Below the pieces are notes generated by a model that saw only the letters and a program-made list of their open reading frames with translations, was not told the origin of the DNA and made no database searches. The position numbers and the translations under genes are program-made. A stretch of DNA of 63,270 nucleotides, filler included, from Octopus bimaculoides (lineage: Eukaryota): NCBI RefSeq assembly GCF_001194135.2. It is 4 parts of 4 records of this genome, joined end to end, with 100 filler letters (N's around TTAATTAATTAA, not from the genome) between each part and the next. Parts side by side here need not be neighbours in the genome. Positions count along the whole stretch, not along the records: positions 22,682 to 52,306 come from NC_068983.1; 3 more parts are not named here. The stretch is one strand, 5' to 3'. Positions 23,560 through 49,790 of the stretch are shown in pieces (the first letter of the stretch is position 1; each line of letters starts with the position of its first letter).

Positions 23560-24700
23560 TGTCAATGTAAAAAGGAAAAACAGATTAGGTTTATCCGTGA
23601 AAAGAAAAGCCTACGGAAAAGACCACGGGAACCTTGGGCAATAGTGTCATGCAAAAAAAACACATTACAGTAAGTGGCTCTCTTTTTCCTTTCTTTTTTT
23701 TTTTTTTTGGTCCATAGGATTATGCTCAAGGCGGCTCCGTCATTCATGCGTGCCATCCTTGCTACATTCACCCATCTTTTTTTAAACATTCACTAGACAA
23801 AACTTCCCTCTCTACTCTCACCTTCCTCTTCAAGTGATATTTTAAGAAGTTGATGAGAGATTGACCAGAGAGGAAAGTGTTTGTCTCCGGACCTNNNNNN
23901 NNNNNNNNNNNNNNNNNNNNNNNNNNNNNNNNNNNNNNNNNNNNNNNNNNNNNNNNNNNNNNNNNNNNNNNNNNNNNNNNNNNNNNNNNNNNNNNNNNNN
24001 NNNNNNNNNNNNNNNNNNNNNNNNNNNNNNNNNNNNNNNNNNNNNNNNNNNNNNNNNNNNNNNNNNNNNNNNNNNNNNNNNNNNNNNNNNNNNNNNNNNN
24101 NNNNNNNNNNNNNNNNNNNNNNNNNNNNNNNNNNNNNNNNNNNNNNNNNNNNNNNNNNNNNNNNNNNNNNNNNNNNNNNNNNNNNNNNNNNNNNNNNNNN
24201 NNNNNNNNNNNNNNNNNNNNNNNNNNNNNNNNNNNNNNNNNNNNNNNNNNNNNNNNNNNNNNNNNNNNNNNNNNNNNNNNNNNNNNNNNNNNNNNNNNNN
24301 NNNNNNNNNNNNNNNNNNNNNNNNAGGTCCCGGCCCGAAAGTCGTCTTGAACAGACGGGTCAGGTATTTCTCGTCAACGCCCAGGTTCGCCCCGAGATCG
24401 CCGTTGTACCTCCCCTCCACTAATCCCCTATAGAATGCTTTGGTTGTGTTGAAGTCGCTCAAAGTCGACCCGGGACGGTATAGTTGCTTGGGAGCAACGC
24501 GACACTGGCGGTGCCATCCGCCCTTCCTCGGCCTCTTTTTGATCCACGACTGCAGTTCGGTCATAGAGACACGAGCTGCGGGAAAGCGCGCTTCACAAAC
24601 GGCGACCTCACTTGTTCACCGTCGTCTACGCAGAGCCGGAGATGCCGCAGTCTCAGCAACAAATACAACGTGTGATAATGTACAAACGAAAGAAAAATAC
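23560..24700 (-). mobile_element. L1/Tx1-like non-LTR retrotransposon, 3' end of ORF2 plus 3' UTR (gap inside)
   Basis: Open peptide ...DFNTTKAFYRGLVEGRYNGDLGANLGVDEKYLTRLFKTTFGPGP before the gap and LSGQSLINFLKYHLKRKVRVERE..FKKRWVNVARM after it, followed by an A-rich tail. The clade call is from motif resemblance. Confidence 0.6.
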
Positions 24701-25519: not shown

Positions 25520-28500
25520 AAATTACAACATCGCAGAACTATCCACACCTCCTCGAACTGTTGCACGAGTAGCACCGCCGAAGGAACTTGCAAGATGTTG
25601 TTCTTGTTCTTATCCTTCTTCTTCTTCCTCTTTCTTCTGTTTCTTCAGATTCTTCATCTTCTGTGAGCTATGAATTAGCGGCCCTCCAAGCTCAATTCGT
25701 GGACAGTGCTGGATAGATAAGTACGTTATTGGTACAGATGCAAATCCAGTCATGCCTTAGCAGAGTGTGGACATCCGGCGATCGCACAGTCCAAGTGTCA
25801 CTTAGGCGAATGTTCGTCTATGTTGGTACCGCCACAAATTCGGTAAGAGGGCTCGTAAATGTATTCACCCTGTTCATTTACAGTTTCTCTTTCGGGGAAT
25901 GACATGGCCAAGGACTAGTGGCGGCATCTGTATTTGACTCATCCCCGACACCGATCGGCCGGTATCCGTTTTCTTGTGGACACTGGGGCAGAAGTTAGTA
26001 TCCTGTCACCTACCCTGGTTCTAAGTAACAAGAAACTTTCGCCTATTGTTCTCCAGGCTGTTAATCACTCTTTGATTGCGACCTTCGGAGAGAAATCAAT
26101 TACCTTGGATTTTGGTCTCAGGCGAATTTTTCAGTAGGTTTTTGTAATCTCTTTTTTTTTATTTTTTACATCATTTCGGTTTGTTGACATCAAACACAAT
26201 AGAAAAGTGAATTCCACCACTGGTCTCAATGTTAGAGGTGTTATTACCAGGATCCCTTTTCTGAACCCTGTTTCTTTAAACCCTTCTTGTTCAAACAGGT
26301 ACGATGCTCTTTTGCGCAAGTATCCTGAATTATAACAATATCATTCAGTCAATCTATATATAAAACAAAGGATGTCTATGTGTGTCTGTTTGTATAATAT
26401 GTATGCATTTCTACAGTTTTCTACCAATTTTTATCAAACTTTACACACATATTACCTATGTGCCAAAGATGGTCATGCACTATAATTTTTTGCTCAGAGC
26501 TCCCGCGTAAAGCGAGAAATCGGGGGAAAGGGTGTTTTACACAGGTTTTTCTCTATAAACTGCAATTTCCAACCGATTCTCTCTCTCATTTTCTGCTTCT
26601 CTTGCTTACATATATTCTCTCTCACCCTCTGTAATAGTTCCTCTCTTTTAGTCAGTATTCTTTCCTTCCTTCTTTCCTGCCTTCTTTCTTTCCTTCCTTT
26701 CTTCCATCCTTTCTTTGTTTCGTTCTTTCCTTCTTTCTCCCTCCCTCTTTCTTTATTTCGCTCTTTCCCTCTTTCCTTCTTTATTTCTCCCTCTTCCTTT
26801 CTTTCTCCTTCCTCTTTTTTTTTCTCCCTCCCTCTTTCTCTCTGTCTTTCTTTCTGTTCGACCAAAGGCGGTGCTCCAGCATGACCACAGTCAAATGACT
26901 GAAACAAGTAAAAGAATTTTTAAAAAACTATGCCATTTTAATCCCTAACAAATAACTCTTTATTTTTCGTGCCATGCGTTGCAAGTAACATGTTAATGTT
27001 GATTTGAGCAAGAGCAAAGTACTCACAGTATTCCGGTTGGAATAAGGTAGGTATGTAAAGGTTGCTGCAGTAAAAACATGCTTGAAATATGAAACAAAAA
27101 ACATAGGTTAGTTAAGCTCTGGTTCTCGAAGTGACTTATCACTAACCAGCTAGCTTATCAACTGACACTTGGTCAAAGCATTTCAATTCAGCCCTGTGCT
27201 CTTTGACATCCTAGCAGTCAGAGAGAGAGTGTATGTGTGAGCGAGAGAGACAGAGCGCATTCACATGGCCACCAGAATATATAGGTATGCAGTCACGCCA
27301 CTTAGTGGGACCTGTAAATCGAATGTTGACACAAGAATCCGGTTCTCCGCAGAAACTAGACAAGGGGCGAAATTCAGCTATCTCGTTTACTACTACAATC
27401 CTATAACTTGCCCTATATTTAAGAATCGTCCAGTCGCCCACTCTGTGACCCACCATATTGTTACTGATGGACCACCGGTATTTTTTAAACCATATCGACT
27501 TGCTTTTGATCGTGCGAAGATTGCATTGGCTGAGTTTGAGCACATACTGGAACAAAGTATTGTTTGTCCATTCAGCAGCCGTTTGATCTCACCCCTTCAT
27601 ATGGTCCCAAAAAAATCTTTCGGTGACTTGCAGTCCTATGGTGACAATAGCCTGTTGAATGCTCGAACGAGGCCTAATAAATGCCTTGTTCCTCATTTAC
27701 AGGACTTTTCTTCCGCTCTACATGGTGCCAGGGTGTTTTCAAAGATTGATCTTTTTCGGGCATACAATCAGATACCCATCGAGACGGATGATATTTCGAA
27801 GACAGCTATCACTATTGCCTTCGGGTTTTTCGAAATCCTCAAAATGCCATTTGGTTTGCGCAATGCTTCTTCAACTTTCCAACGTATCATTGATGCTGTA
27901 ATCCAAAGTTTACTCTATATTTATGTGTATATAGATGACTTGTTCGTTGCCAGCGCAAACGAAGACATGCACGAAAAACATCTGCAGTTACTTTTAAATC
28001 GTCTTTCTCACAACGGCGTAGTTATGACCCCAATAAATGCCTTTTCGGATCTTTTTCTTTATTCTTTCTGGGCAACCGTATTGATGAAAAAGGTATTCAC
28101 CCTCACGACGAGAACGTTAAATCAGTTTTGTATTTTCCTTCTCCTACTTCCTTGAGACAGCTGAGAGGTTTATTGACCTGATCAATTTTTATCGTCGGTT
28201 TATTCCTCGTTGTGCAGAACTTATACACCTCCTCCCGGATATTCTTCGACATCGCACGAAAAAAAACCCAGCATATCACTCTTGATGATACAGTCTGCAG
28301 CCTTTAATGAAATTGAGAATACCTTAGCTGACGTTGGTTCATCTGAAGTCTGGTGCACCACTCTGTTAGTTGATGCATCAGATACTGGTGTTGGTGGCAT
28401 TCTTCAAAAGAATATAAATGGAACTTAGCAGCCACTTTCCTTTTTCGCCGAGCAATTCAAAGTGACTGAGACGAAATATAGTACTTTTGGCCGAAAATTG

Positions 28501-29290
28501 TTAGCAGCGAACCTTAGTATTAAACACTTCCGGCACATGCTGGAGGGTTCTGTGTTTTCTATCATAAGCCTCTAACATACGCTCTGCGCTCCAATTCCGA
28601 TCGTCACTCACCAAGGGAAATTTGGCACCTTGATTTTATATCACAATACACCACGGATATTTGGCTCGGATAATTCTTCCTCTACCCTTTTCTCTTGGTA
28701 ATATTTGGTGTGACATTTCTACGGAGCACGAACGTTTCTTTGTTCCAAAGAAGTATAGGTATTTGGATTTTTTCTGCTCTTCACAATTTATCACATCCTG
28801 GAGTAAATTCCACCCTGAAGTTGATTGCTGCCCGATTTGTATGTTGCTGGTATCAACAAATATACCAGGGAATCAGCCAAGAGTTGCGTCCCTTGTCAGA
28901 AAGCGAAACTTCATTGCCTTGTCAAATCACCTCTGGGAATTTTCTCAATACCAGATGCACGTTTCAAACACGTGCATATTGATATCATTGGACCACTGCC
29001 ACCATTTCAATATTACACACCTTTTGACCTGTGTGGATTGTTTTTATCCATGGCCCGAAATCATCCCTCTTCGAGATACCACAGCAGAAACAATAGCTAA
29101 AGCTCTCCTTCAACATTGGATTGCAAGTTTTGGTACATTTACTTCCATTACAACAGACAGACGACGTCAGTTTGAGTTCAATGTCTTCTCGGAATTGAAA
29201 CGTCTTTTACGTTGAAAAGGTCTCCTGCAACTGCTTACCATCCTGCAGCCAATGATACGGTGGGACGGTTCCACTGACAACTGAAATCAG
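25520..29290 (+). mobile_element. Ty3/Gypsy LTR-retrotransposon internal region, degenerate (gag-PR-RT-RH-IN); no LTRs identified
   Basis: gag motif CWYRHKFGKRARKC at 25821; protease FLVDTGAEVS (ORF 25934-26137); RT SKIDLFRAYNQI, MPFGLRNASSTFQ and YIDD (ORF 27265-28155); RNase H LVDASDTGVGGIL and KYSTFGRKLLA; integrase HNLSHPG..C..CQK, VHIDIIGPLP, ITTDRRRQF and AYHPAAN. Multiple stops and frameshifts. Confidence 0.95.
26331..27407. mobile_element. ~1.07-kb composite insertion nested in the Gypsy pol between PR and RT
   Basis: The Gypsy peptide stops at LLRKYPEL and resumes at TCPIFKNRPVAHSVTHHIVT. TATAAC occurs at both junctions (26331-26336, 27402-27407). It contains a TCTATATATAAAA-type start, a CT-rich tract and a SINE tail. 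Confidence 0.6.
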
Positions 29291-34266: not shown

Positions 34267-34308
34267 TCACATTTGTCGCAATCGAGCTAACCGTTGGCTA
34301 AGTTCATC
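34267..34308 (-). CDS. CHMP1B: CHMP1B exon 7 (last coding): DELSQRLARLRQM*
   Basis: Acceptor cttttctacttttcacAG, 42 nt, TGA stop. Encodes the C-terminal MIT-interacting MIM1 motif. Confidence 0.95.
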   Translation of the reverse strand, partial: DELSQRLARLRQM

Positions 34309-34582
34309 CTGTGAAAAGTAGAAAAGAAGAACATTATTCATTATGTAATTTTATGCATGTAACTAAAAACATAACCCCCTTATGGCTTCTCAGTTTCTTT
34401 AAGCCCATGTCAGCGTTTAACCTTACATTTTATACATTTATTCTAGTAATTCACACATTTGTAATCAGTGACAATTACTTTTAAAATAATAACTATCTTT
34501 ACTGCTTTTCGACTAAAAATAATTACTATATCAGAAAGAAACAGAGCAGAGCTGACTACATTGACCCCAATATATAATTCTT

Positions 34583-34807
34583 TTACTCTTTTACTTGTTT
34601 CAGTCATTTGACTGTGGCCATGCTGGAGCACCGCCTTTAGTTGAGCAAATCGACCCCAGGACTTATTCTTTGTAAGCCTAGTACTTATTCTATCGGTCCC
34701 TTTTGCCGAACTGCTAAGTTACGGGGACATAAACACACCAGCATTGGTTGTCAAGTGATGTTGGAGGAACAAACACAGACACGCAAACATATACAGACAC
34801 ATACGTG

Positions 34808-34839
<32 letters not shown>

Positions 34840-34998
34840 TACGACGGGCTTCTTTCAGTTTCCGTCTACCAAATCCACTCACAAGGCTTTGGTCGGCCCG
34901 AGGCTATAGTAGAAGACACTTGCCCAAGGTGCCACGCAGTGGGACTGAACCCGGAACCGTGTGGTTGGTAAACAAGCTACTTACCACACAGCCAGTCC
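34583..34998 (-). mobile_element. SINE family 1, full-length copy in CHMP1B intron 6
   Basis: Near-identical to 6369-6760. Further partial copies at about 10663-10797, 26860-26918, 40375-40600, 50790-50880 and 59140-59460. Confidence 0.85.
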
Positions 34999-36345
34999 TT
35001 CGCCTTGGTAATTATTTTATCTATTCCAGTGGAATTGTGGAATTAGCTGATAAGAGGTCCTCTATGCAGTCACTTCACCTGCAACAAGTAGTTCATTATT
35101 ATCATATATTTTTCTTGCTGTTTGGCCCCAGGTCAGTCATGACAGAGCAGACTTATATTGAAAGGTGTTCCAACACTTATTGTCCTGTCTTTGTGCACAG
35201 CTAAGACAACATTGTCCAGTGTGTCCTTCAGTTTTTAAAGACATTATTATATGTTATTTGACTGCTGTTTCTAATAGTTAAGTACCTACATGAAGGCTTT
35301 CTCAATGGCTGTCTGTTTTATTAGCAACTAAAGCAGACAGTCTGTGTAAAGTTGCCTAACATTTTTTACAAATTTCTTACATAGCACAGAAAGAAAATTG
35401 ATGCCAAGTTTCTGGGCTGATTTCTTTCTTTATTTTATTAAAGAAGTAAAAACAATGTGGTGAACAGTTGAGAAAATTATACTAATAAAGACTAATCTAA
35501 ATATGTTCAGGTATATAAAAGGAGTGTTTGTTGCAACTAATTTCATATATATGAGTGTTATGTACACTTTAGAAAGGAGAAAAACAGTAAGCATGGGTTG
35601 TAAGAGTTGCAGTTTAGCTCCAGACCAGGTATGATTGAATAAACTTATGATCAAAGGCGTCAAACATGGCACAGTGCATCCACGATATTTCCCAATATCT
35701 CCTTCTTTTCTAAGAATGTATGATAGCAAGGGAATTTGGCTGTTATTTCTAGCAGGTTGAACAATCATGTAAAGATTGTTATTGGAGTGTGTTGTAATAC
35801 TATTTTGATCTGCTGTTTAGTTATTTTTATCTTATTAAACTGGCTCATAAATTGGTAGACAATATAAAATATATATTTCATAATTAACAACCTACTTTCA
35901 TCCAACTGCAATAATACAGTTATTTCATATATTAAGAAAATACACCAACATTGTCATATATTTCATTAAAAAAACATGTGGCTAAAATCTTTATATTTTC
36001 AAGAGATGTCAGGCTTTACACTCATTGATAATCTTTCATGATGACTAAACATTTATAATGTTGCAAGAATTGCCTTCCAGAGTCTGCATTTCGTCCTCTG
36101 AGCTATGATTTCAGCTGTAAATAGTTGATAAAATTTCATGCAAGTAGCTTTGCTAAACCTATTTATAGCAAGATACAAAAGGCTTAACAAATTCTAGAGA
36201 CTGCTTGAAGTCCTTGGCTGGTGAATCCACTATCTACTTCAAATGTACCAAATAAGAAGAAACAGGAAGAAATAGCATGGGGAACTATAAGGAGAAAAAG
36301 AATGACAAAATAAAAAGTGGATGAGCTGAAATGTCTTTTACAAAC

Positions 36346-36430
36346 CTGTTCCTGTGTTGAATTTGTGGCAGCTGTGGCAGAACTGAGAGCAGAGTCTCGG
36401 GCAGAGGGAAGATTCATATTTAATTCCAAT
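36346..36430 (-). CDS. CHMP1B: CHMP1B exon 6: (G)LELNMNLPSARDSALSSATAATNSTQEQ
   Basis: Acceptor ttacAG, 85 nt, phase 2 to 0, donor CAG|GTTTGT. Confidence 0.93.
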
Positions 36431-37839
36431 CTGTAACAAAAAGAAACATTTAGCACATTTAAATGCTTTCCAACTTTCTCTGTAGTGCAAATTCTTAATC
36501 TAAAAATATTTTATCATACTTTTTTTTTTTACATAAATGTAAACACACTTTCAAGAAATCAATAAATAATAACATCTTGCATTGAACAAAACACTAGCAT
36601 TTAGAAATGTAACAAATTACTGTCACCTATGTCTTACAAAGAAACATTACATCTTTCACCATCCCTGCTCCAACCCTAAACAGAAAAATAGATTCAAATT
36701 GGCAGCACATACAAAAATTCTTCCTCATGAACTTGAAGACTTTAAATGGCATATATATCATAGACACACTTGACAAAATGAAAGTGCCATTTAAATCATT
36801 TACTCATTATCCATCACTTCTCAAAGAACCAATGAGTACAGTGATCCAGAAGGATGAATGCACAAAACTCTTAGCTACAAGTTAAGGTAGAAAAAGTTCA
36901 AGGAGCTACTACTACTGGCAGCAAAAAGATTCTCTCATTCAGTGAAGAGCAGATTGTATGAAGTTTATACATTAAGAGTGATAGTGAATGACAGCAAAAC
37001 ACAAGTTTTGAACATGGGGAATGTTCCAAAGATAAAAAGAAATGAGGTAAGCACACTCAATATGCAATGTGAATATACATGAACAATGGAACACAACTGA
37101 GCTGAGAGAAAAACCTGGCTTAAGAGGAATCAACAGCAATGTACAAGCAAAGAGATTATAATGGTATGGACATGTGATGGTTATGAAGTATGACAGGTGA
37201 GAGAAGATATGCCAAGTGATCCAAATGAAAGGGATCAGAGGAAAACTGAGGAGGACAAAGAGTGAGGTGGTGAAGGCTGAACCTTGCAGAAGAACTGTCA
37301 AAAAACTGCAACAAGCAACTTGATACTCTCTCAAGACCTCTTCCAGCTACCCCCATACAAACCTTTCCTAATTCCCCATAATACTTTAAAATCTCAATGC
37401 CTTGCTTAAAGCATCCACCCACTTTCATATCCTCTTTCTCATTCAAGGGGACACTTCAGTCCTGCAAGTTAGTTTCAAGGTAATCTCATTAGTGCTGGTG
37501 CCATGAAAAAAGCACCCTGTACATTCTGTAAAGTGGTTGGCTTAGGAAGAGCATCCAGCTGTAGAAATCATGCCGAAACTGTGACACTGAAGCAAGATGT
37601 GATCCTCTAACTGGGATCTTCTCAAAACATCCAACTCATACCAGCAAAGAAAGCAAATGTAAAACAATGATGATTATTGCTTTCCTAAACAGATTGCCTA
37701 CACTGCAGCTTATGGAGTTCACATTTTCCTCATTTCATACATATATATATATAAGTATATATGTGGTTTGAAAGTAAGTGTGATGTTTTTATAATAGCAT
37801 GAATTTAGTGTTAAATAATTTGAAAGAGTATATATTTAC

Positions 37840-37991
37840 CCAGCTTCATCTGCAACCTGCATCATTAGTTGATCCACTTCATTTTGTGGTGCTGTTAAAG
37901 TTGATGTGTTGCTCATTGTACCTTCCATTACTTGAGACTGTACATCAAGGTTTTCAAATTCTTTCTCAAATCGATCCATTAATGTAGCAAC
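37840..37991 (-). CDS. CHMP1B: CHMP1B exon 5: VATLMDRFEKEFENLDVQSQVMEGTMSNTSTLTAPQNEVDQLMMQVADEA(G)
   Basis: Acceptor ctctcgcAG, 152 nt, donor GG|GTAAAT. Matches the CHMP1 MDxFExxFExLDVQ...EAG segment. Confidence 0.96.
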
Positions 37992-38605
37992 CTGCGAGAG
38001 TAAGCAAACCAAAAAAAAATCAAATTTTATCTACACACACAAACAAATACACATTATACACACACAAAATACACATACATGATAAATTAAATCTTGCAAT
38101 ATATACAAATTTTATCTCTAGCAAAATCTTGAACAGAAGAGAAGAAACCTTCATGTCATATTTCCATACAAAAAGACGCAAGGCTTTAAGCTTGTGTTCC
38201 TTAGCATAAAGACATAATTGAAAATGGCTACCAAGGTCACTGTATGATTTTATTTTTGCAAGACTAATCCTCTCTTTATCATGAATCTGCTTTCTCTTCT
38301 TTGGTATTCTTAGGAATACCTAATGAATGTGTGTGCCATGTATAACATACTTTAAAAATATTCTCGGTTAACCTGATGCATGTTTTTACTCTAAAATCTA
38401 TCAAGCTTTACATTTGCACTGTAATGATCATGTGCAACAACTGATTTCCTGTTAAATTTATCTTGCATATGCATTCATCAGATGAACTCCTTCCTTATAA
38501 ATATAGCTTCCATATTGGCACTGAGATTCAAAAACATTTTTTGTGTAACTATCCAATTTTCATAGATATTTTCAAACACACAAAACTCTGTAAACAATAA
38601 ATTAC

Positions 38606-38674
38606 CTTCTCCAAATTCATAGATTTCATAGCTGATTCCATAGATTTCACAACACCTCCCATAGACTGAGTGAC
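38606..38674 (-). CDS. CHMP1B: CHMP1B exon 4: VTQSMGGVVKSMESAMKSMNLEK
   Basis: Acceptor ccttccAG, 69 nt, phase 0/0, donor AAG|GTAATT. Confidence 0.96.
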
Positions 38675-40352
38675 CTGGAAGGAAAAAAGAAAACGACAAT
38701 ATAAGTTGATGGCAATTTCACATTTGAATGTGGTAGAAAAATAAAGCACATAGCAGGAACTGTTATATATATATTTTTAAATATAATAAATTCATTACAT
38801 TTATACAGACTGGATTACTTATGTGAAAGAACCTCATCAGTTATCTCTAATTTAGAGATTTTCAAAGATGGAATAAAAGTTAATGTTGATGCTTCTAATA
38901 TCTAATATCTAAACAACACAGAAATATGATACTTCATAATACAGTGAGTAATCAAGGAAAGATGCAAATCAATCAATAGTAGGTTATAATTGTAAGAAGG
39001 ATAATGTTATATTTTTAAATGGAAAGAGGGTAGTATTCAGTTATGCATCTACATATTCTGTGCTCAAAACTTGTTGAAGTTGAATTTGCCTTTTATCCCT
39101 CTGGGGTATATAAATAATCGCCAGCTTTTGTAGTTAAACAAACCTATTATCAAAGATGTTTTGATTTTGACTAATAACTCCATTTTCACAAATATTATTG
39201 TATCTAAGACTTCATTATCCAATGTGTCCTGCAATTTTTATAGTACAGTGTAATTTGAGGTAACTTTGGCTGCAATTTCTGGCAGAAAAATGTACTGTGT
39301 GATGCACAGCAGTCAATTCGTTTGATTACACTCCTCTCCACTACAAATCTGTAGACCTCTGCCTATGCTAGAAATCAGTAATTTTAGGTAGCAGTAAGGT
39401 GGCAAGAATGGGAAAGTGTAAAATAATCCTTTCTATAGGCACAATGCTTGAAACTTTGTGGGAGTTTTTTTTTATTAGTTAGTTAGTGACGAGACAGTAC
39501 CCATGATATTTCCAGGCCATCCCAGCAGTTCTAGGAAAAAATAATTGAGTGAAGTGTTTAGTGCAGGTCCAGGTCCTCCTGGTATAAGACAGAGTAAGAT
39601 TGACAGGAGAAATATAGACAGCTAAGTTGACAGTGGGTGGAAAGAGAACATAGTTAATGCATTCAGAGGAGCAAAAGCCACTATTGTAGCACTTAAAATA
39701 GCTAAGAGTGGAAATATTGTGCTGTTGAGGTTGTAACATGTTATTGTATAGGAGATTTTTGTAAGTCAATGAAATAAACTCTTTTTAGATGAGGTTCAAG
39801 ATGTTTAGATGCAGCAGCAGCCAACACTGTAATAGATAATTCAGGTAGATGGTCAGGTATTCAATGATGTATGCAAAAAACAGTTAAGAATCACTACCTA
39901 CTTGTATTATCTAAGTCCATGCAGTTGGCCAACTTGAGTTATTTCTCTTAGTTCACTTTTTGTACAAACACAAATTATACTAGCCAAAAATCTTTGTAAC
40001 TCTTTTCAAGTGTTTGCCTTGGTTGTCCAATGTTTTGAGATGGAATTTGGTAGATGGAAACTGTGCAAAAGTCCATCATATATCATCATCACCACCATCA
40101 TCAATTTAACATCCACTTTTCCATACTTACATGGGTCAAACAGAATTTGTTGAGTTAGATTTTCTATAGCTGGATGCCCTTCCTGTCACCAACCCATACT
40201 TGTTTCCAAGTAAGGTAATATTTCCCCAATGCCCAGACATGTTCTCACAGAATATCAGAAATGAATGACACAGGTTGTATGACAGTGGCAATCATTTTAG
40301 AACTATCATGCCATGTCAAGACAAAGAAACTCAAACATACACACACAGACAC

Positions 40353-40387
<35 letters not shown>

Positions 40388-40769
40388 TTCTTTTATATGT
40401 TTCAGCCTTGAGGCTGCAGCCATATATATATACAATGGGCTTCTTTCAATTTCTGATGATCAAATTCACTCTCAAGGCTTTGGTTGGTCCAGGGCTATAG
40501 TAGAAGACACTTGCCAAAGGTACCATGCAGTGGGACTGAACCCGGAGCCATGTGGATGGAAAACAAACAAGCAAATTTCTTACCATACAACTATGCCTGG
40601 CTCAAGGGCTGAGAGCTTCATGTATCAGCACTTATCAAAGTGATGTGTGAGAAGTGTTGAGTAGTGTCAATGCTCAAAACTCTCAGCCCTTAAGTCACTT
40701 TGTAACTTTTATCAATTAAATAAAAAAATACATACACTCATGTAGACTTCTATTTTCCTGTCTATATTA

Positions 40770-40807
<38 letters not shown>

Positions 40808-41258
40808 TTCAATGTCTGTTATTTCATGCTATCCTAAGTTGGACAGGGGTATATTTTTATTTGATGTGGTAGCATTTATCAATTTGATGCCCTTGCAGTC
40901 CCCAACCCCAAAATGCTCTTTTTTTTCTGTTTCAAATATGATTCCAATGTTCTTTGAAAGTATAGAGTGACTGGTCGTAATGTCAACAAGGATTGTAAAC
41001 ATCATGTCACCATTTCAGTCAGATAGTGACAAAGATACTTTTGTCGGATGGTGACAGACAACCAGTTGCTCTATACTTTTATAGACTAGTAGAAGTTAAC
41101 TTCATTCATACTGGACTTTCTATTGATATCAGAAACACTGCAAAAATATATTTCCTTGTAGAATGTTAAGTTGATCAAAGATATGAAAGTCAATAAAATA
41201 GCTGGCAGTAAAATAACAAAATACAGCAAATGAAAGAAAAAGAAAAAATTCTACAAAC

Positions 41259-41405
41259 CCTTTTGGTTGTTATTGCTGTTTGTACTCTAGCTGAAACTGC
41301 ATCTATCCGAGCACTCATTCTTCTGTAGTTCAAAGCTTGATTTTTCTCTCTGATAGCATTCTCAGCATGAATTTTTGCACCTTCAGAGTTCCCTTTCTGA
41401 ATTGC
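41259..41405 (-). CDS. CHMP1B: CHMP1B exon 3: AIQKGNSEGAKIHAENAIREKNQALNYRRMSARIDAVSARVQTAITTKR
   Basis: Acceptor ctgttttacAG, 147 nt, phase 0/0, donor AGG|GTTTGT. Contains the Snf7/ESCRT-III IHAENAIR motif. Absent from the ORF track. Confidence 0.96.
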
Positions 41406-44163
41406 CTGTAAAACAGTATTGGTTAAAATTTTACTCCAGTTATCCAGTGTAAATTCTATTTTGTGTGTATATGAAAGAATTCAATGTTGGTACAGTAAAG
41501 CATTAAGCATATACCAGTTTCTATTTAATTCAACCCATTTGATACTAACCCATCTGAGACTTCCTTTGTCTCCTATGATACAAACTTCCTGTTTTAAAGT
41601 TATCTACATTAAATTCTCTCATCAAAATTTTATGTCAGTTTATGTCCCATATACCACCTTAATAGGTTCAGTTATTTCGCAAAAATTCTTCATTATTTCC
41701 AAAATTAATTAAAACAAAAACAGTGTATTTCAACAGAAATATGGTAGCGAAATGGTTAAAACATCACACTCAAGTGGTTAGCTCTTTGTTCTTATCTGTT
41801 CTTCTGCTACCCATTGAGAGGAATTACAAAATGATTTGCTCTCTGGATCAGTGGTTCTCAAATGGTGTGCCATATGGAACATCTAGTTGCTACAGAGATT
41901 TTTAAAAACATGAATTAAGTCTTTAATAAATCCATATTAATGACTGGGTATTTCAGAAAATGTTACAAAATTATTCACAATATTAAATTCGAATTACGAC
42001 AAACGTAAACAAACAAACGAAGTTTGCTTTTAGAGGCGTTGAGATGTCTTAGAAAAGAAGTGATTGAGAATTTAAAATCACTTCTTTAACTTTCTTATTC
42101 ACAATATTTTTACACACAAGATGATTAATAAAGCAAAGTAGATAATAGTTTTCTATATGTTTTGTAAATTCTAACTATAAAAAAATTTTGTTTAATTTTA
42201 CAATAATTTTTATTTGATCTCCAGTGTGTGTGCCAGTGATTTTTTTTTTCTTATAGAACCTACAATGTGCTTCAAAGTCACAAATATTGAGAAGCACTGC
42301 TCCAAACAATACAAGCAATACCAGAGTATAAAGTTAAAATACAGTTGACAGTCCCTTATCCACCTAAACATTGACTTATCATCTATTGTAAATGAAATCC
42401 TGTAATAACATCCTACTAAATTGATCTGCAATACATCATCATCATGTAAACTTCCATTTTACAATGTGGACATGGTATGGATGGGCCTGCCATACAGTTT
42501 ATTATCTCTCCTTTCTCTCCTGAACCTTTATCATCTCAACCATGGGTCCAGAATCCTGAAATCTGACCTCGCCACCACAAAGGTACCTTCAACAGTCAGC
42601 TGGTAAGTAAAAATGAGCCAATCTTACTTCTGGATACTATTTTAATGGTTTTATGCAGTTAGTAATGATGTGACTGTTTTCAACTACAGTCAATCACCCA
42701 AACTGACGTCAGATAAACCCAAGCCAACGAAGAAGCCTTTACATGATCGTTCAACCTGCTGCAAAAAGTAGCCACATTTTCGAAAATTACACCCAACCAT
42801 TTTTGAGAAAAATAGGAAGAACACATCAGAGAATGTTACTCTTAAATACAAAGTTGAGACAGTCACGGTTAGAACATCTTTAATATAAGGTATAATCTGG
42901 GCTGACAGAGCAAAACAACTATAGGGGTTGCGTCCCTTTATATCAAGAGTTAACTTGGTCATTCAATTAAATTGAGATGGCAAAATAAATTCCAGACTAA
43001 AATATGTACTAAGGTTGATGTGATTAACTAAAACCCTAAGAGAAAAGCTCTAGAATCAATGCAGTCTAATGACTGAAACTTGTAAAAGAATCAAGAGTTA
43101 TGGTTATGAAAAAAACTATTTCTATATATCATCAAGATAGATATCACAACACCAAATGTTAATTGATATAGAAGAGGAAAGATGTAATTATTGTTTTAAG
43201 TATTCAAATTTGCTAAGCATTTGGTGGTGAAGTAAAAAAAAATGTGAAACACAAATGCCTCCAAAGCTCAAAGAGTGTATAAGGACTCAGTGTTTAACTC
43301 TAGTATAATGATGTTCAGTTGGTAAGTGATGCAAATACTTAACTACATGCATAGTCATACATGAACAAATATGTAACAGAAATCACATCCTTATTATCTA
43401 GGAAGTTATTTGAGATACTAGAGGCTAAGACAGTGTGTTAATAAAACCATTTAATTATTCTCAGACTATTAGCCCTTAAATACTTCAGCCTTCAATAGTC
43501 AGGGGAATTTACCCAGAAACAGTAGACTTGGATCCCATCACCAGTACTAAATTGTGCCTATGGCCAAGCAAATTTTCTTCTAAATAATTGTTATTTAACA
43601 ATTATTTGTTAAATATCCCCATCCCCAATCAAGCAGATCTATAATGAAAGGCATTCCAACTGTAACCATACCAACTTCTATATCTATGACCTCATTGGTT
43701 ATGTAATTTTATTTAAGATAGTGTTATTTAAAGGAGACTTAAGCACTATTTCTAACAGGTCAGATAACTCCTTGGGTCTACCTGTATAGTCTTCAGTTGC
43801 TCAATGTAGCAGCTGGATATCTATTCACAAATTCCTTGTTTTTAAAATAAGGACCACACATTTTAATTTCTAAACTATATGAAGACATGTCCAAAATGAG
43901 TTCAAGAGGGCTACAGCTGAAAATATCAAATTACTTCATTTAATAAACTAGCTCTTTATCATAAGTCTTCACAAGTAAAGCTGGACAGAGATAACCTACA
44001 ACAATAACACCAATACTTTATGTCCAGATTTTGAAGGTAAATAAAATTCACCAAAAGACAAACTTATCAATGAAGAAATATGAACAATTCTATAACAATA
44101 TTGCATCAGATAAAAGTCAGAGGCTTTCACTGACAAATAAACTTAATACCATTTCTTACTTAC

Positions 44164-44261
44164 TTTTTTTAACTTTAGTTTTTCTTCTTTTTCGGATTTT
44201 TCACTTTTCTTTGCTGACCTCTCCAAATTCTTGGCAGCAAATTTCAGGTTAAACAAATGCT
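44164..44261 (-). CDS. CHMP1B: CHMP1B exon 2: (K)HLFNLKFAAKNLERSAKKSEKSEKEEKLKLKK
   Basis: 98 nt, phase 1 to 0, donor AAA|GTAAGT. The acceptor is preceded by a U12 branch site. Confidence 0.95.
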
Positions 44262-45914
44262 CTTTCAAAATGTTAAGGAGTAATGAAGCAGAGTGTCTTT
44301 TTTTTTTTTTTTTTTTCATGCATATTGTGTATGGCAAGCAAATGAATGAATCAATCAATCAACATTAAAAAATGGAAACATTGTATCAAATGGCACTGTT
44401 ACTTTTTCTTTCTGCTCAATGTTATCAGGGTTTAAAAACCAAGCCCTTTCCTAATTTAATCATTATCTTCATCATCATTTAGCATCTATTTTTCATACTG
44501 GCACGGGTTAGACGGTTTCATTGAAACTGGTGAGCTGGAGAGCGGCACCAGGTTCCAATCTGATTTGGCATGGTTTCTATGGTTGAATGCCCTTCCTAAT
44601 GCCAACCATTCCAAGAGTGTAATGGATGCTTTTTACATGCCACCAGCACAGATGTCAGTTACATGACACCAGCGTCGGCCACAACTACAATTTCACTTGG
44701 CTGCACGAGTCTTCTCAAGCACAGCATATCATCAAAGGTCTGTGTCACAACAAAAAGAAAATGGAAACTACCAACCATATGATCTCTCTCAACAAAATTA
44801 ATCTTGTCGAACTGAGAGATCTCTTATGTGATTGCTTGACTTGCTAAAAATAGCAATCATATCTCCATCAAATCACACCCTACAGTATTCAAAAAGATAG
44901 AACACATTAGGTAATGTGGTCCCAGATGTGTAAAAAAGATGGTATGATCACAATTGGAATGCTTTTGATCATGGGCCTGAACTATTAGTGTTGATCTGGA
45001 CTTAAAGAACATATTAGTCTTATGCTTAATCAAATGATATCAATATAGATTTTGATATTATTCAGTCTGAATTCAGTATCATTTTCACTATCTACATTAC
45101 TGAAGTTTGGAAATCATAAATTTATTCATTGAATAAATGATTAGTGGGTGTAAAAATTCAGAATTCATCTTATTACATGTTTCTGCTGTTTATATTTATT
45201 CTATTCATTTTGACTTATATTACAGCATTCTATGAATACCTCAATGCAACCAGAAAAAAATCAAAATTCTAGACACAACCCAATAAGTGGTTTCAACATA
45301 GCCCCTTGACTTGCTAGAAATAATGTCAAAATGGCCCTCAAATTGCATTCTACTGTCTTATAAAAAGAACAGACACGTTGGATAATGTATTCTTAGATAC
45401 ATTATGACTGAAACAAAAGATATTTCAGGCTTATTGTGTCTCTAGTCAGGTTGAAGCTATTACAGTTGGTTATCACTAGTCAGCTTTACTTGTGAAGACC
45501 TTTTGCCATAGGCCTGTTCAATCAGGGTTAATATGTAGCTTAGCAATAACAATATTTTGGACAATGTTCAGACATATTACTTATCTGAGAATGTCAACAG
45601 TACATACACTATAATAAAGGATGAAGAACTAATTTGATTCTAACAGCGATTAAAAGAGTTACCTGCCTAGCATTCCTTTCTTAGTTGATGCCTGTTGATT
45701 GAAAATCAAGTCAATTGCTTGACCATTAATGATCAGAAGTATCTATCAAAAAGTGATCAGCTCTAGTGACTAATGAATGTTAAGTGAGACCAGTGGGCTA
45801 CAATTGTTTATTTTTAGCTACATCCACAGAAGGTGTTGTGCACTACAAGCTAACGAATCACTAGTTCAACTTTACAATGCTGCCACCACTTATCTTGGCT
45901 AGTTGCACCTACTA

Positions 45915-46805
45915 CAGGGTGTCCCAAAAGTCACTGATGGGTTTCAATTTTTAATAACTTCCTTAACTTTACAAATAAATGCATAAAATTTTGATACAAT
46001 ATAAAGGACATATTGAAAATTAATATGCACTAGTCAAATTTCGCAACACCACAATATCACAAATAAAAAATGCCATTGCTTAAATGGCAACCATTTTCGG
46101 CTTCACACACCCATGCACTTTCCAAAACTTGCACTTTCACACTCAAGAGTTTCAGACCCCACTTCTCTGATTTCTCTATTGATATTTTCCTTCAGTTGCA
46201 CCAAGGTCTCCAGTTTGTTGATGTAAACACTCTCTTTCAGATATCCACCCCCCCAAAAAATATCCAGGCTAGTCAAGTCTGGGGAATGTGAAGGCCAGTT
46301 GACATTGCCATAGCAGGTAATTATTCTCTCTCCAAAGTGCTGCCATAGCAACTACATTGTTTCTCCTGTGGTACGAACAGTTACCCTATCTTGTTGGAAC
46401 CATGCCTGAGGTCTACTTTGAATGGCCTTCACATTCTCCAGACTTGACTATCCTGGATTTTTTCTTCTGGGGATACCTGAAAGAGAGGGTTTACATCAAC
46501 AAACTGGAGACCCTGATGCAACTGAAGGAGAATATCAATAGAGAAATCAGAGAAGTGGGGTCTGAAACTCTTGAGTGTGTTATAGTGCAAGTTTTGGAAA
46601 GAGCATGGGCATGTGAAATCGAAAATGGCTACCATTTAAGCAATGTCATTTTTCATATGTGATATAGTGGTGTTGCAAAATTTGGCTTGTGCATATTAAT
46701 TTCCAATTATGCCCTTTATATTGTATCAAAATTTTATGCATTTATTTGTAAAGTTAAGGAAGTTATTAAAAATTGAAACCCATCAGTGACTTTTGGGACA
46801 CCCTG
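45915..46805. mobile_element. Palindromic Tc1/mariner-superfamily derivative: two 383-bp inverted arms, each holding the transposase 3' end and TIR; TA target duplication
   Basis: TA|CAGGGTGTCCCAAAAG...CTTTTGGGACACCCTG|TA. Arms are 45915-46297 and 46423-46805. Both translate as WPSHSPDLT..DFF.WGYLKE.VY. The spacer on minus gives QQDRVTVRT..HFGERII. Confidence 0.92.
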
Positions 46806-48663
46806 TATATGGTACTTATTTACAACTAAATGAAATGAGCCATTTGAAATTTGGTTTTGGTCACATTTATAATACAATGTCAGTGATAGGATATGAACAT
46901 TGTTGCCATTATTAAAATTACTATTGAACTTTACTATATGATTTTAGCCAGCACAGACTCCGATTTGGGTTTTAATTCCAAATTTATTCTTTAGCTATCT
47001 TGCATATGCACCAACAAATTTTCAGTTAGATTATGTTGTCCAAAAAATTATCGTTGGCACGTATTTAGACAGATACATGTTATAGGAGATATAAAACCAA
47101 AGACCTTTGGGAATCTTGGACTCGCCTTTGTAAAAAGTAGCAACAGCATAAAACCACTCAAGTGTGACTATAGAAACAGCAGTTCTATAGATTTAAGCGA
47201 TTTTTAAAACTCACCACTTAAGTCCATCTTTTTGAAGTAGACTATTTCTACTTCCAATTTTTTGACGAAAAAATGTGTTTATTTACAAAATACATTATGA
47301 CGTCATTAAAATCAATCTTTATAATAAGTCAACATATGACAGGTATTTATTTGTTATTTTATTATAATCCTTAACTGTAATGATTTTCAAAGCTCTGAGG
47401 TCTACATGCCACTTCTCAAATTGAGTTTGCTTTTTTTTATTATTATTTGTCTTTCTGTTACGTTTTCAATTGAGTAAAATAAACACACAAGGAATAATTT
47501 AATTTAGATATAAATACAATAGTGGCCTTATTAAATCAATGTTATCAATTTATTCAGAATAAAGTAATAAAGACAAACAACACTTTAACATATTATATAT
47601 TCGAAGTATTATACTATATAAATATTATATATTCGAAGTATTATTCCATAACAAGATTCTTTCGGCAATCTTATTAAAATTCTTAAGCAGCATTAAAAGT
47701 TCAACGATTTAGTAAGTTACTATTAATCTGAAATCAAATTTTATACTCCTGAAGTATAAACAGAAGTTCATGAATTTGTATAAGTTCTCTAATGCCGAGT
47801 GAAGAAGTGAAATTTGGCATTCCGGGCTTCACAACTACACAATTTTTTAAAGATTTTATTTCACACTGCGTACCCTTATAATTAACAAAATGATCTCGAA
47901 CTATTTGATTTCATTTGACTATATGTATTTAAAACTAGAAACTCGTCCTGTTAAAATTAAGTGTAAAAAATATTGGATATTCATTTCCATTTCAAGGGAA
48001 CCTTTAGGCACAATTCGCTGTAATTTTGCAGTCTGGTAGAAATAGCAGCCAAATTTTCCCCAAACTACAACTTACTGTCTCATAAAAGAAAAGCACATTA
48101 GATATTATAGTTTTATTCATACTATGCTTGAATAAAAGATGAGAGAATCAGATGCTAGAACACTTTTGATCATATTACACGATCATATGTCTATCGTGAA
48201 GTTAAACAACAACTCGTAGAACACTACCAGAACTAACAATGATTTTAAGTTTCACTTGGTTACAGGATAGAAAAAAATATTAACTGAGTCGAGTGTAGTA
48301 TAGAACTGGCATTTATATAAACGACCTTGGAATGATGAAAAGCAAAAAACTGAATCAGCCGATTCCCCTCATTTTGTCAAAACAAAAATTAAAAACTTAG
48401 ATAACTGGTCATGAGTAACATATTCAATTGCCACACCTTGATAATACAAATAGTGAAATGGCAATTTTCCCAGAAAGAATATTCGTATTTCGTCATCCTT
48501 GGAAAAAAAAATTTGGGGTCCGATTAAAACTATGAGAGAAAAGTTTGTTCGGTGCGAAATCTTGTCAAAAAAATAAAAATGGAAATAGAGAGAAAGAGAA
48601 AAAAAGAGAAGAGGCAAAACGAAAGAAATAGAAGTAGATGTTTTCGCTATTTCTTCGATTCAA

Positions 48664-48747
48664 ATAAAGTTTAAAATTTAGTAGCTCTATCATAAAGTTT
48701 AAAATTTAGTAGCTCTATCATAAAGTTTAAAATTTAGTAGCTCTATC
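48664..48747. repeat. Three tandem copies of a 28-bp unit (ATAAAGTTTAAAATTTAGTAGCTCTATC)
   Basis: Three identical units read directly. Confidence 0.9.
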
Positions 48748-49114
48748 ATTTATATATAGTAGCTCATTATAATTATTAACTTCTATAATTATTTAATGTT
48801 GATGTTCTTCCATAAATACGAAACATCAATGAAAAGTGAACTCGATGCGATTAAGATAATGTAAGCATTAAAAACAATAACAATAATAATAAATTAACAG
48901 TGACAAATTTCAAGCTAGAAGTAACAATAAATCTTTAACTAAAACTATACTAATTAAAGATATTAATTATCTAACTTACTTGATTAGAAGGAGTAAACAA
49001 ATACTGGTGAGACATTACATGTTTACAACTATCAGGTGCTTGTGTAAACAGAGTAAGACCCCAAACACAGACATGTCGGAAAGTCTGAGAACATAATCTC
49101 TAAGAAAAGGATAC

Positions 49115-49130
49115 TTTCCATGTTCGACAT
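49115..49130 (-). CDS. CHMP1B: CHMP1B coding exon 1 (16 nt): MSNME(K)
   Basis: ATGTCGAACATGGAAA|GTATCCTT. Spliced to exon 2 it gives MSNMEKHLFNLKFAAK, the CHMP1B N-terminus. Total CDS is 609 nt (202 aa plus stop). Confidence 0.93.
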
Positions 49131-49221
49131 CGTGAAAGGTAAAATATTATGGATCAAAAATAATATTTTCGAAGAGTATTAATGAACAACCTTTACTTCT
49201 TGACTAATCAACTCGAGTTAC

Positions 49222-49229
49222 TGACGTAA
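49222..49229. promoter_or_regulatory. CRE/ATF-like site TGACGTAA about 90 nt upstream of the CHMP1B ATG
   Basis: Motif match and position only; function untested. Confidence 0.2.
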
Positions 49230-49351
49230 TGGCAGAGCTAGAAAATTATTTTGAGCCACCCGCTTTCTGTCTTACACTGATGTGTGGGTGTGTGCTCACC
49301 TAAGTGTTTATACACACATACTAATCTATATGGGTGTGTGTGTGTGTGTGC

Positions 49352-49393
<42 letters not shown>

Positions 49394-49790
49394 NNNNNNN
49401 NNNNNNNNNNNNNNNNNNNNNNNNNNNNNNNNNNNNNNNNNNNNNNNNNNNNNNNNNNNNNNNNNNNNNNNNNNNNNNNNNNNNNNNNNNNNNNNNNNNN
49501 NNNNNNNNNNNNNNNNNNNNNNNNNNNNNNNNNNNNNNNNNNNNNNNNNNNNNNNNNNNNNNNNNNNNNNNNNNNNNNNNNNNNNNNNNNNNNNNNNNNN
49601 NNNNNNNNNNNNNNNNNNNNNNNNNNNNNNNNNNNNNNNNNNNNNNNNNNNNNNNNNNNNNNNNNNNNNNNNNNNNNNNNNNNNNNNNNNNNNNNNNNNN
49701 NNNNNNNNNNNNNNNNNNNNNNNNNNNNNNNNNNNNNNNNNNNNNNNNNNNNNNNNNNNNNNNNNNNNNNNNNNNNNNNNNNNNNNNNAG

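What the first reader, a model, noticed from the sequence alone, without database searches (positions are those of the whole stretch)
44262..49114. Minor-spliceosome (U12) intron controls joining of the 16-nt first coding exon of CHMP1B
The 5' splice site GTATCCTTTT and branch site TCCTTAAC 10 nt from an AAG acceptor with no polypyrimidine tract match the U12 consensus exactly, and the join restores MSNMEK|HLFNLK (seen plus established). U12 introns are rare and often rate-limiting (established). The intron is 4.85 kb, holds a 383-bp-arm palindrome, and has a second AG 2 nt downstream whose use would frameshift the mRNA. An ESCRT-III gene regulated through minor splicing in a cephalopod is an inference; I cannot say whether this intron is already catalogued.
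Basis: partly seen in the sequence, partly recalled or inferred. Interest (0 to 1): 0.75.

Follow-up and report, generated by a model that had tools for sequence, protein, structure and literature searches.

The report
Ancient U12 intron in octopod CHMP1B
The first intron of this octopus ESCRT-III gene (CHMP1B) is a textbook minor-spliceosome (U12-type) intron, but the same intron sits at the same spot in ten invertebrate species from five phyla plus a sea anemone, so it is old and ordinary, not a cephalopod novelty.

Summary
The coding part of exon 1 (ATGTCGAACATGGAAA, 49130-49115) is followed by GTATCCTTT. This 9-mer occurs only once in the window. TCCTTAAC (44279-44272) lies 10 nt before an AAG acceptor, and the join gives MSNMEK|HLFNLK of a 7-exon, 202-aa CHMP1B gene.

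The other five introns look U2-type. The same intron position and phase carries GTATCCTTT plus a TCCTTRAY-like branch site in Argonauta, limpet, scallop, annelid, brachiopod, hemichordate, scorpion, mayfly and Nematostella. The intron therefore predates the cnidarian-bilaterian split.

Vertebrate CHMP1A keeps the position but is U2-type, with a G at -1. Transcript contigs of a related species, probably another cephalopod, carry the predicted junction.

The 383-bp-arm palindrome is an 891-bp Tc1/mariner-derived foldback element with TA target duplications. It is absent from the Argonauta intron.

Using the +2 AG would give MSNMETFV-stop, and retaining the intron would give a 32-aa peptide.

No read data could be used. 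Usage in this species, intron retention and any regulation are therefore untested. Verdict: a real and ordinary U12 intron, a new member of a known kind, of low to moderate interest.

The parts
49115..49130 (-). Coding part of CHMP1B exon 1 (ATGTCGAACATGGAAA, encoding MSNME plus the first base of Lys6). The 5' UTR and transcription start were not determined.
   Evidence: The same sequence block ATGGA(N)A|GT ends exon 1 in all 10 invertebrate orthologues.
49106..49114 (-). U12-type 5' splice site GTATCCTTT (the element that pairs with U11 and later U6atac).
   Evidence: This is the only occurrence in the window. It is identical in 10 of 10 invertebrate orthologous introns.
44262..49114 (-). Intron 1: 4853 nt, phase 1, GT-AG, U12-type.
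44272..44279 (-). U12-type branch-site element TCCTTAAC. The presumed branch A is at 44273, 11 nt upstream of the junction.
44260..44264 (-). Acceptor AAG (44264-44262) followed by exonic AG (44261-44260), forming a tandem AG. Use of the second AG would read MSNMETFV-stop.
   Evidence: The translation was read directly from the sequence.
44164..44261 (-). Exon 2 (98 nt), followed by the U2-type donor GTAAGT.
34267..41405 (-). Exons 3-7 (41405-41259, 38674-38606, 37991-37840, 36430-36346, and 34308-34267 including the TGA stop). They are separated by four GT...YAG introns with pyrimidine tracts, and intron 2 upstream is of the same type.
45913..46807 (.). An 891-bp foldback element (45915-46805) flanked by TA/TA target-site duplications. 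It has 383-bp inverted arms, each ending in CAGGGTGTCCCAAAAGTC and each holding the 3' end of a Tc1/mariner-like transposase reading frame. The spacer is 125 bp.
   Evidence: The WPSHSPDL motif matches Sleeping Beauty transposase at E=0.029. The predicted RNA hairpin has an energy of -622 kcal/mol, z = -56. The element is absent from the Argonauta intron.
49200..49270 (-). Promoter-proximal block conserved with Argonauta. It includes a CRE-like TTACGTCA at 49229-49222.
   Evidence: The promoter function is inferred.

Best explanation
Intron 1 of the single CHMP1 (CHMP1B-like) gene of this octopod is a canonical GT-AG U12-type intron.

**Inferred mechanism, from the established U12 pathway.**
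- The U11/U12 di-snRNP binds GTATCCTTT through U11 and TCCTTAAC through U12 together.
- No U2AF-type pyrimidine tract is needed.
- The acceptor is chosen by its short distance from the branch A. Here the first AG lies 11 nt downstream.

**Consequences of removal.** Removing the intron is obligatory for any CHMP1B protein.
- Retention gives a 32-codon reading frame.
- Using the +2 AG gives a stop after 8 codons.

**Origin.**
- The intron was inherited from at least the cnidarian-bilaterian ancestor and has kept its U12 signals in every invertebrate lineage sampled.
- In vertebrate CHMP1A the same intron position has become U2-type. This goes with a change of the split codon from Lys (A at -1) to Asp (G at -1).
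- The 383-bp-arm palindrome is a later Tc1/mariner-derived foldback insertion and is not a splicing signal.

There is no evidence here that the intron is more than constitutively, if perhaps slowly, spliced.
For: **Signals in this gene.**
- The 5' splice site matches 9/9, the branch site 8/8, and the branch A lies 11 nt from the junction.
- The 9-mer is unique in the window.
- Introns 2-6 of the gene have GTAAGT-like donors, YAG acceptors and at best 5/8 branch-site matches.

**Orthologous introns.**
- Nine orthologous introns at the identical position and phase carry GTATCCTTT and a 7-8/8 TCCTTRAY element 10-17 nt from the junction. They come from Argonauta, Lottia, Argopecten, Owenia, Lingula, Glandiceps, Centruroides, Cloeon and Nematostella.
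- CHMP1A of Dipodomys and Scyliorhinus has an intron at the same position but with GTAAGC or GTATGG donors, pyrimidine tracts and a G at -1.

**Transcripts.** Transcript-like contigs from 6 sequencing runs of a relative (86% protein identity, same MSNMEK start) read ATGTCGAATATGGAAA|AGCATTT.

**Literature.**
- Octopus sinensis is among the species in a pan-eukaryotic minor-intron survey, which describes molluscs as relatively rich in minor introns (PMC10639083).
- Lottia has U6atac (PMC2396436).
- U12-to-U2 conversion is thought to be one-way and helped by a G at -1 (PMC7367187).
Against:
- The exact protein is not in the protein collection.
- No formal intronIC or position-weight-matrix score was computed.
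- Dependence on the minor spliceosome is inferred from sequence only.
- The Nematostella branch-site distance (17 nt) is longer than usual.
- The transcription start and any upstream non-coding exon are unseen because of the assembly gap at 49394-49788.
Confidence: 0.9

Rival explanations
1. The U12 intron acts as a regulated throttle on ESCRT-III CHMP1 dosage. Minor splicing would be rate-limiting, and retention or use of the +2 AG would tune output. In this octopod the 383-bp double-stranded RNA hairpin would modulate this further.
For: - A perfect consensus has been kept in ten species from seven phyla, even though conversion to U2-type is mutationally easy (PMC7367187).
- The intron lies 7-22 nt after the ATG, so any failure to splice abolishes the protein (read directly from the sequence).
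- U12 introns can be rate-limiting and can be switched through U6atac stability (Patel 2002 and Younis 2013, from my own knowledge).
- The hairpin is very stable.
Against: - No retention or isoform data are available.
- The -1 base is the first position of a conserved Lys codon. That keeps it A, disfavours U1 binding, and gives a neutral reason for the intron staying U12-type.
- The large survey argues that neutral processes explain most minor-intron evolution (PMC10639083).
- The +2 AG is not conserved. Five of the ten invertebrate orthologues have AA.
- The palindrome is absent in Argonauta.
Confidence: 0.15
2. The intron is removed by the major (U2-type) spliceosome despite its U12-like motifs.
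For: It has GT-AG termini. The stretch upstream of the branch site is moderately pyrimidine-rich (0.68).
Against: - The donor AAA|GTATCC pairs poorly with U1, mismatching at -1, +4, +5 and +6.
- The acceptor is AAG with a purine-rich last 6 nt.
- Conservation of intron positions +4 to +9 and of TCCTTRAY across phyla is unexplained by U1/U2 recognition.
Confidence: 0.03
3. The main transcript starts inside the intron and reads straight into exon 2. An open frame with an ATG at about 44322 (MKKKKKKRHSASLLLNILKEHLFNLK...) runs across the acceptor, so exon 1 and the U12 intron would be irrelevant.
For: ORF 44143-44358 on the minus strand is continuous across the 3' splice site.
Against: - The upstream part of this frame is an A-run and is not conserved in Argonauta.
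- Orthologous proteins and cDNA contigs begin M(SN)M(E/D)K, which is encoded by exon 1.
- Exon 1 and its flanks are conserved.
Confidence: 0.03

Closest known systems
Catalogued GT-AG U12-type introns (U12DB, IAOD, MIDB), for example the RNF121 and UFD1 introns listed in Moyer et al. 2020, Table 1
   Same: The donor |GTATCCTTT, the TCCTTAAC-type branch site close to the acceptor, a non-zero phase, and conservation of position over long evolutionary distances.
   Different: The host gene. No searchable paper links CHMP1, CHMP1A or CHMP1B to a minor intron. Human-centred lists cannot contain it. Mammalian CHMP1A is U2-type at this position, and human CHMP1B is intronless (my own knowledge).
Vertebrate CHMP1A intron 1
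   Same: The same position and phase: it splits the codon two residues before the conserved L-F, 7 nt after the ATG.
   Different: It is U2-type, with GTAAGC or GTATGG donors, long pyrimidine tracts, CAG acceptors and a G at -1. This fits the U12-to-U2 class-conversion model.
Intronic inverted-repeat transposons that form long double-stranded RNA (for example inverted Alu pairs, or MITE and foldback derivatives of Tc1/mariner)
   Same: TA target duplication, terminal inverted repeats, long complementary arms and a predicted hairpin of about 380 bp.
   Different: The arms are two inverted copies of the 3' coding end of one transposon. Copy number in the genome and any editing or splicing effect are unknown.

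Membership tests
U12-type (minor-spliceosome) intron, GT-AG subtype | 5' splice site |RTATCCTTT | tested here: met
   GTATCCTTT at 49114-49106, a 9/9 match, and the only occurrence in the window.
U12-type (minor-spliceosome) intron, GT-AG subtype | Branch-site element TCCTTRAY near the 3' end | tested here: met
   TCCTTAAC at 44279-44272, an 8/8 match. The other introns of the gene reach at most 5/8.
U12-type (minor-spliceosome) intron, GT-AG subtype | Short distance from branch A to the 3' splice site (about 10-15 nt; the range is from my own knowledge of Dietrich et al. 2001) | tested here: met
   11 nt here, 10-13 nt in 8 orthologues, and 17 nt in Nematostella.
U12-type (minor-spliceosome) intron, GT-AG subtype | No U2-type pyrimidine tract or YAG acceptor | tested here: inconclusive
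   The spacer is ATTTTGAAAG with A at -3. However, pyrimidine content at -25..-4 is 0.68, within the range of the gene's U2-type introns (0.59-0.91).
U12-type (minor-spliceosome) intron, GT-AG subtype | U12 signals conserved in orthologous introns | tested here: met
   The other 9 invertebrate orthologues all have GTATCCTTT and a 7-8/8 branch site at the same position and phase.
U12-type (minor-spliceosome) intron, GT-AG subtype | Predicted junction present in mRNA | tested here: inconclusive
   The junction ATGGAAA|AGCAT is present in transcript-like contigs of a relative from 6 runs.
U12-type (minor-spliceosome) intron, GT-AG subtype | Classifier score (intronIC or U12 position weight matrices) above threshold | not tested
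U12-type (minor-spliceosome) intron, GT-AG subtype | Organism has U11, U12, U4atac and U6atac, and splicing depends on them | not testable with these tools
   Only 30 kb of the genome is held, and Rfam finds no RNA gene in it. From the literature, Octopus sinensis is among the species of a minor-intron survey that describes molluscs as relatively enriched, and Lottia has U6atac.
CHMP1/Did2/Vps46 (ESCRT-III, Snf7 domain) | Full-length similarity to CHMP1 proteins with the Snf7 domain and the C-terminal MIT-interacting motif | tested here: met
   94% identity to Argonauta 'CHMP1b-2-like'. There are more than 2000 hits at E<=1e-20 and the 120 listed carry PF03357. The C-terminus DELSQRLARLR is identical to the human-like probe.
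Tc1/mariner-derived foldback or MITE-like element | TA target-site duplication and terminal inverted repeats | tested here: met
   TA at 45913-14 and 46806-07, and CAGGGTGTCCCAAAAGTC at both ends.
Tc1/mariner-derived foldback or MITE-like element | Transposase homology | tested here: inconclusive
   Only the WPSxSPDL block matches Sleeping Beauty transposase (E=0.029). Pfam finds nothing.
Regulated or rate-limiting minor intron ('molecular switch') | Retention above neighbouring introns that responds to minor-spliceosome activity | not testable with these tools
   No read data were available.

The most novel reading that the evidence does not exclude
CHMP1 output in invertebrate animals is gated by minor splicing of an intron placed immediately after the start codon, and this is why the perfect U12 consensus has survived since before the cnidarian-bilaterian split. 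Vertebrates escaped the gate by converting CHMP1A to U2-type and by using an intronless CHMP1B. In this octopod, the 383-bp intronic double-stranded RNA hairpin adds a link between RNA editing or dsRNA sensing and minor-intron removal.
Probability: 0.1. Interest if true: 0.55.

Novelty: new member of a known kind. Interest (0 to 1): 0.25.

Why it matters
**Practical value.** The result gives a correct gene model for octopod CHMP1B. The 16 coding nucleotides of exon 1 lie 4.85 kb upstream, behind a non-U2 intron, and are easy for gene finders to miss.

**Evolutionary value.** It adds a clean, deeply conserved example to the set of ancestral metazoan minor introns.
- It has a built-in natural experiment. 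The same position is U12-type wherever the split codon is Lys (A at -1). It is U2-type in vertebrate CHMP1A, where the codon is Asp (G at -1).
- This fits the published class-conversion model.

**Limits.** The result does not show regulation of ESCRT-III by minor splicing, and it reveals nothing new about how U12 introns work.

Tried and rejected
No runs could be named for read laying, so there are no junction, retention or +2 AG counts. I did not try to get round this.

**Negative results**
- Literature: no paper holds CHMP1 together with 'minor intron'. The CHMP1B/U12 and CHMP1A/U12 co-mentions are irrelevant. The supplements held for Moyer 2020 and Larue & Roy 2023 contain no gene lists.
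- Rfam on the piece finds no RNA families.
- Pfam on the palindrome's reading frames finds nothing. Only a weak match to the Sleeping Beauty structure was found.

**Ideas rejected**
- URB1/Npa1 lies head-to-head with CHMP1 in Lottia, Argopecten and Lingula, but not within the 2.5 kb upstream here.
- A second TCCTTAAC on the transcribed strand inside the palindrome (46760-46753) has no AG within about 35 nt, so I rejected it as a cryptic acceptor.
- Alternative start inside the intron: rejected (see the rival explanations).

**Not reached**
Full report
**Observation.** The gene lies on the minus strand.
- Direct reading and an exon model checked by translation give seven coding exons: 49130-49115, 44261-44164, 41405-41259, 38674-38606, 37991-37840, 36430-36346 and 34308-34267.
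- Together they encode a 202-aa protein, MSNMEKHLFNLKF...DELSQRLARLRQM.
- It is 94% identical to the 'charged multivesicular body protein 1b-2-like' of Argonauta hians and 70-82% identical to CHMP1B of other invertebrates.
- It begins with GTATCCTTTT.
- TCCTTAAC sits at 44279-44272, followed by ATTTTGAAAG and then exonic AG|CAT. The second AG 2 nt downstream is therefore real.
- GTATCCTTT occurs once in the whole window, at this boundary (expected 0.32). TCCTTAAC occurs four times (expected 1.28).

**Contrast within the gene.**
- Introns 2-6 have GTAAGT, GTTTGT, GTAATT, GTAAAT and GTTTGT donors.
- They have CAG acceptors, mostly clear pyrimidine tracts, and at best a 5/8 match to the U12 branch consensus.
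- Only intron 1 has U12 features.
- The 'no polypyrimidine tract' point is weaker than stated. The last 10 nt are purine-rich and -3 is A, but the -25..-4 window is 68% pyrimidine because of the branch element and the 14 nt before it.

**Comparative evidence (the main new result).** I fetched the genomic loci of CHMP1 orthologues and located the first intron by exact translation.
- In Argonauta hians, Lottia gigantea, Argopecten irradians, Owenia fusiformis, Lingula anatina, Glandiceps talaboti, Centruroides vittatus, Cloeon dipterum and Nematostella vectensis, the coding part of exon 1 is 7-22 nt long and always ends ATGGA(N)A.
- In all of them the intron splits the first base of the Lys codon that precedes H/N-L-F, and it begins with GTATCCTTT.
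- A TCCTTRAY-like element (7-8 of 8) lies with its branch A 10-13 nt from the junction (17 nt in Nematostella).
- Intron length varies from 225 nt to 15.9 kb. Between the two octopods only the exon-proximal parts align.
- The conserved features are therefore the U12 signals themselves. The intron is at least as old as the cnidarian-bilaterian ancestor.

**Vertebrates.**
- CHMP1A of a mammal (Dipodomys) and a shark (Scyliorhinus) has an intron at the same position and phase: ATGGACG|GT..., 7 nt after the ATG.
- It is U2-type, with GTAAGC or GTATGG donors, long pyrimidine tracts and CAG acceptors.
- The split codon is Asp instead of Lys, so -1 is G instead of A.
- This matches the class-conversion model of Moyer et al., in which a G at -1 strengthens U1 pairing and conversion runs from U12 to U2 (PMC7367187; see also PMC10639083).
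- Human CHMP1B is intronless (my own knowledge).
- Together these facts explain why no human-centred list, and no searchable paper, links CHMP1 to minor splicing.

**Transcript evidence.** Usage of the junction, retention and +2 AG use in this species are untested.
- Indirect evidence exists. Six transcript-like contigs from six sequencing runs encode a 202-aa protein that is 86% identical and starts with the same MSNMEK.
- These contigs read ATGTCGAATATGGAAA|AGCATTT, which is the predicted join at the first AG. I infer that the source is another cephalopod.
- The Argonauta annotation uses the same structure.

**Consequences read from the sequence.**
- Intron retention would give MSNMESILFLEIMFSDFPTCLCLGSYSVYTST-stop.
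- Use of the +2 AG would give MSNMETFV-stop.
- Correct removal is therefore obligatory for any protein.
- The +2 AG is not a conserved feature. Exon 2 starts with AG in five of the ten invertebrate orthologues and AA in the other five, which is a synonymous choice of Lys codon.

**The palindrome.**
- The arms are 45915-46297 and 46423-46805 (383 bp, 91% identical), with a 125-bp spacer.
- Both outer ends read CAGGGTGTCCCAAAAGTC and are flanked by TA.
- Each arm holds the C-terminal end of a transposase-like frame. Its WPSHSPDL...W..LK..V block matches Sleeping Beauty transposase (E=0.029). Pfam is silent.
- It is best read as a Tc1/mariner-derived foldback element inserted into the intron.
- It is absent from the Argonauta intron, so it is young and not part of the conserved splicing apparatus.
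- As RNA it would form a near-perfect hairpin of about 380 bp (-622 kcal/mol, z = -56). Whether this matters for editing or splicing is unknown.

**How it most likely works.**
- Shown: the sequence signals, their spacing and their conservation.
- Inferred from the established U12 pathway:
  - U11 and U12 cooperatively recognise the donor and branch site.
  - U4atac/U6atac.U5 then joins.
  - The acceptor is chosen by its distance from the branch point.
- The organism very likely has the machinery. Octopus sinensis appears in the pan-eukaryotic minor-intron survey, which describes molluscs as relatively enriched in minor introns, and a mollusc U6atac has been described.
- A regulatory role (a rate-limiting step or a switch) is possible but has no support here.
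- A neutral account fits equally well. The -1 base is fixed as A by a conserved Lys codon, which disfavours takeover by U1.

**Verdict.** This is a real, canonical and anciently conserved U12-type intron. It is a new named member of a well-known class, not a cephalopod innovation.
- Confidence in the U12 assignment is about 0.9.
- Confidence in any special regulation is about 0.15.
- Interest is low to moderate (0.25).

Noticed in passing
window 49200-49270 (minus strand); L001 2872-2960: A block about 70-140 nt upstream of the ATG is conserved between this octopod and Argonauta (GTGGCTCAAAATAAT..CTAGCTCT..CATTACGTCAGT..CTCGAGT). It includes a CRE/ATF-like TTACGTCA at 49229-49222 and is probably the core promoter.
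   Followed up: partly
window 48963-49060 (minus strand, inside intron 1): The first ~150 nt of the intron are also conserved with Argonauta. Examples are CACCTGATA..TGTAAACAT.TAAT, which contains an E-box CACCTG, and ATATTTGTTTAC. A strong U2-like donor CAA|GTAAGT lies at 48979-48974, 135 nt downstream of the U12 donor. The function is unknown.
   Followed up: partly
window 49331-49788: A (CA)n(TA)n microsatellite runs into an assembly gap (N run 49394-49788) only 264 nt upstream of the ATG. The transcription start and full 5' UTR of exon 1 cannot be read. A second gap lies at 23895-24324.
   Followed up: no
window 25934-29215 (+): A decayed LTR-retrotransposon pol region lies downstream of the gene. 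It has an aspartyl-protease DTGA motif (weak Pfam hits), reverse transcriptase RVT_1 (E=3e-19) and an integrase core (E=0.0016), broken by frameshifts.
   Followed up: partly
window 44546-44649 and 49798-49900; also 34840-34933: Copies of a short interspersed repeat (82% identical) lie in intron 1 and upstream of the gene. A related repeat near 34840-34933 also matches two places inside the Argonauta intron 1 (L001 4949-5036 and 7434-7488).
   Followed up: no
window 50187-50649 (-): Two overlapping reading frames resemble the C-terminal tail of a non-LTR retrotransposon reverse transcriptase (...LRWYGHV...). This rests on my recollection only. Pfam found nothing.
   Followed up: partly
L012 2010-2029 (Nematostella); L016 3828-3847 and L017 (vertebrate CHMP1A): Nematostella and vertebrate CHMP1A share a second intron right after ...LFxLK. 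This makes exon 2 a 20-nt micro-exon bounded by a U12-type and a U2-type intron in Nematostella. The octopod and the other bilaterian invertebrates sampled lack that intron.
   Followed up: partly
L008 1-504, L009 1-1243, L011 1-1074: URB1/Npa1 lies head-to-head immediately upstream of CHMP1 in limpet, scallop and brachiopod, which is conserved microsynteny. No trace of it is seen in the 2.5 kb upstream of the gap in the window.
   Followed up: yes
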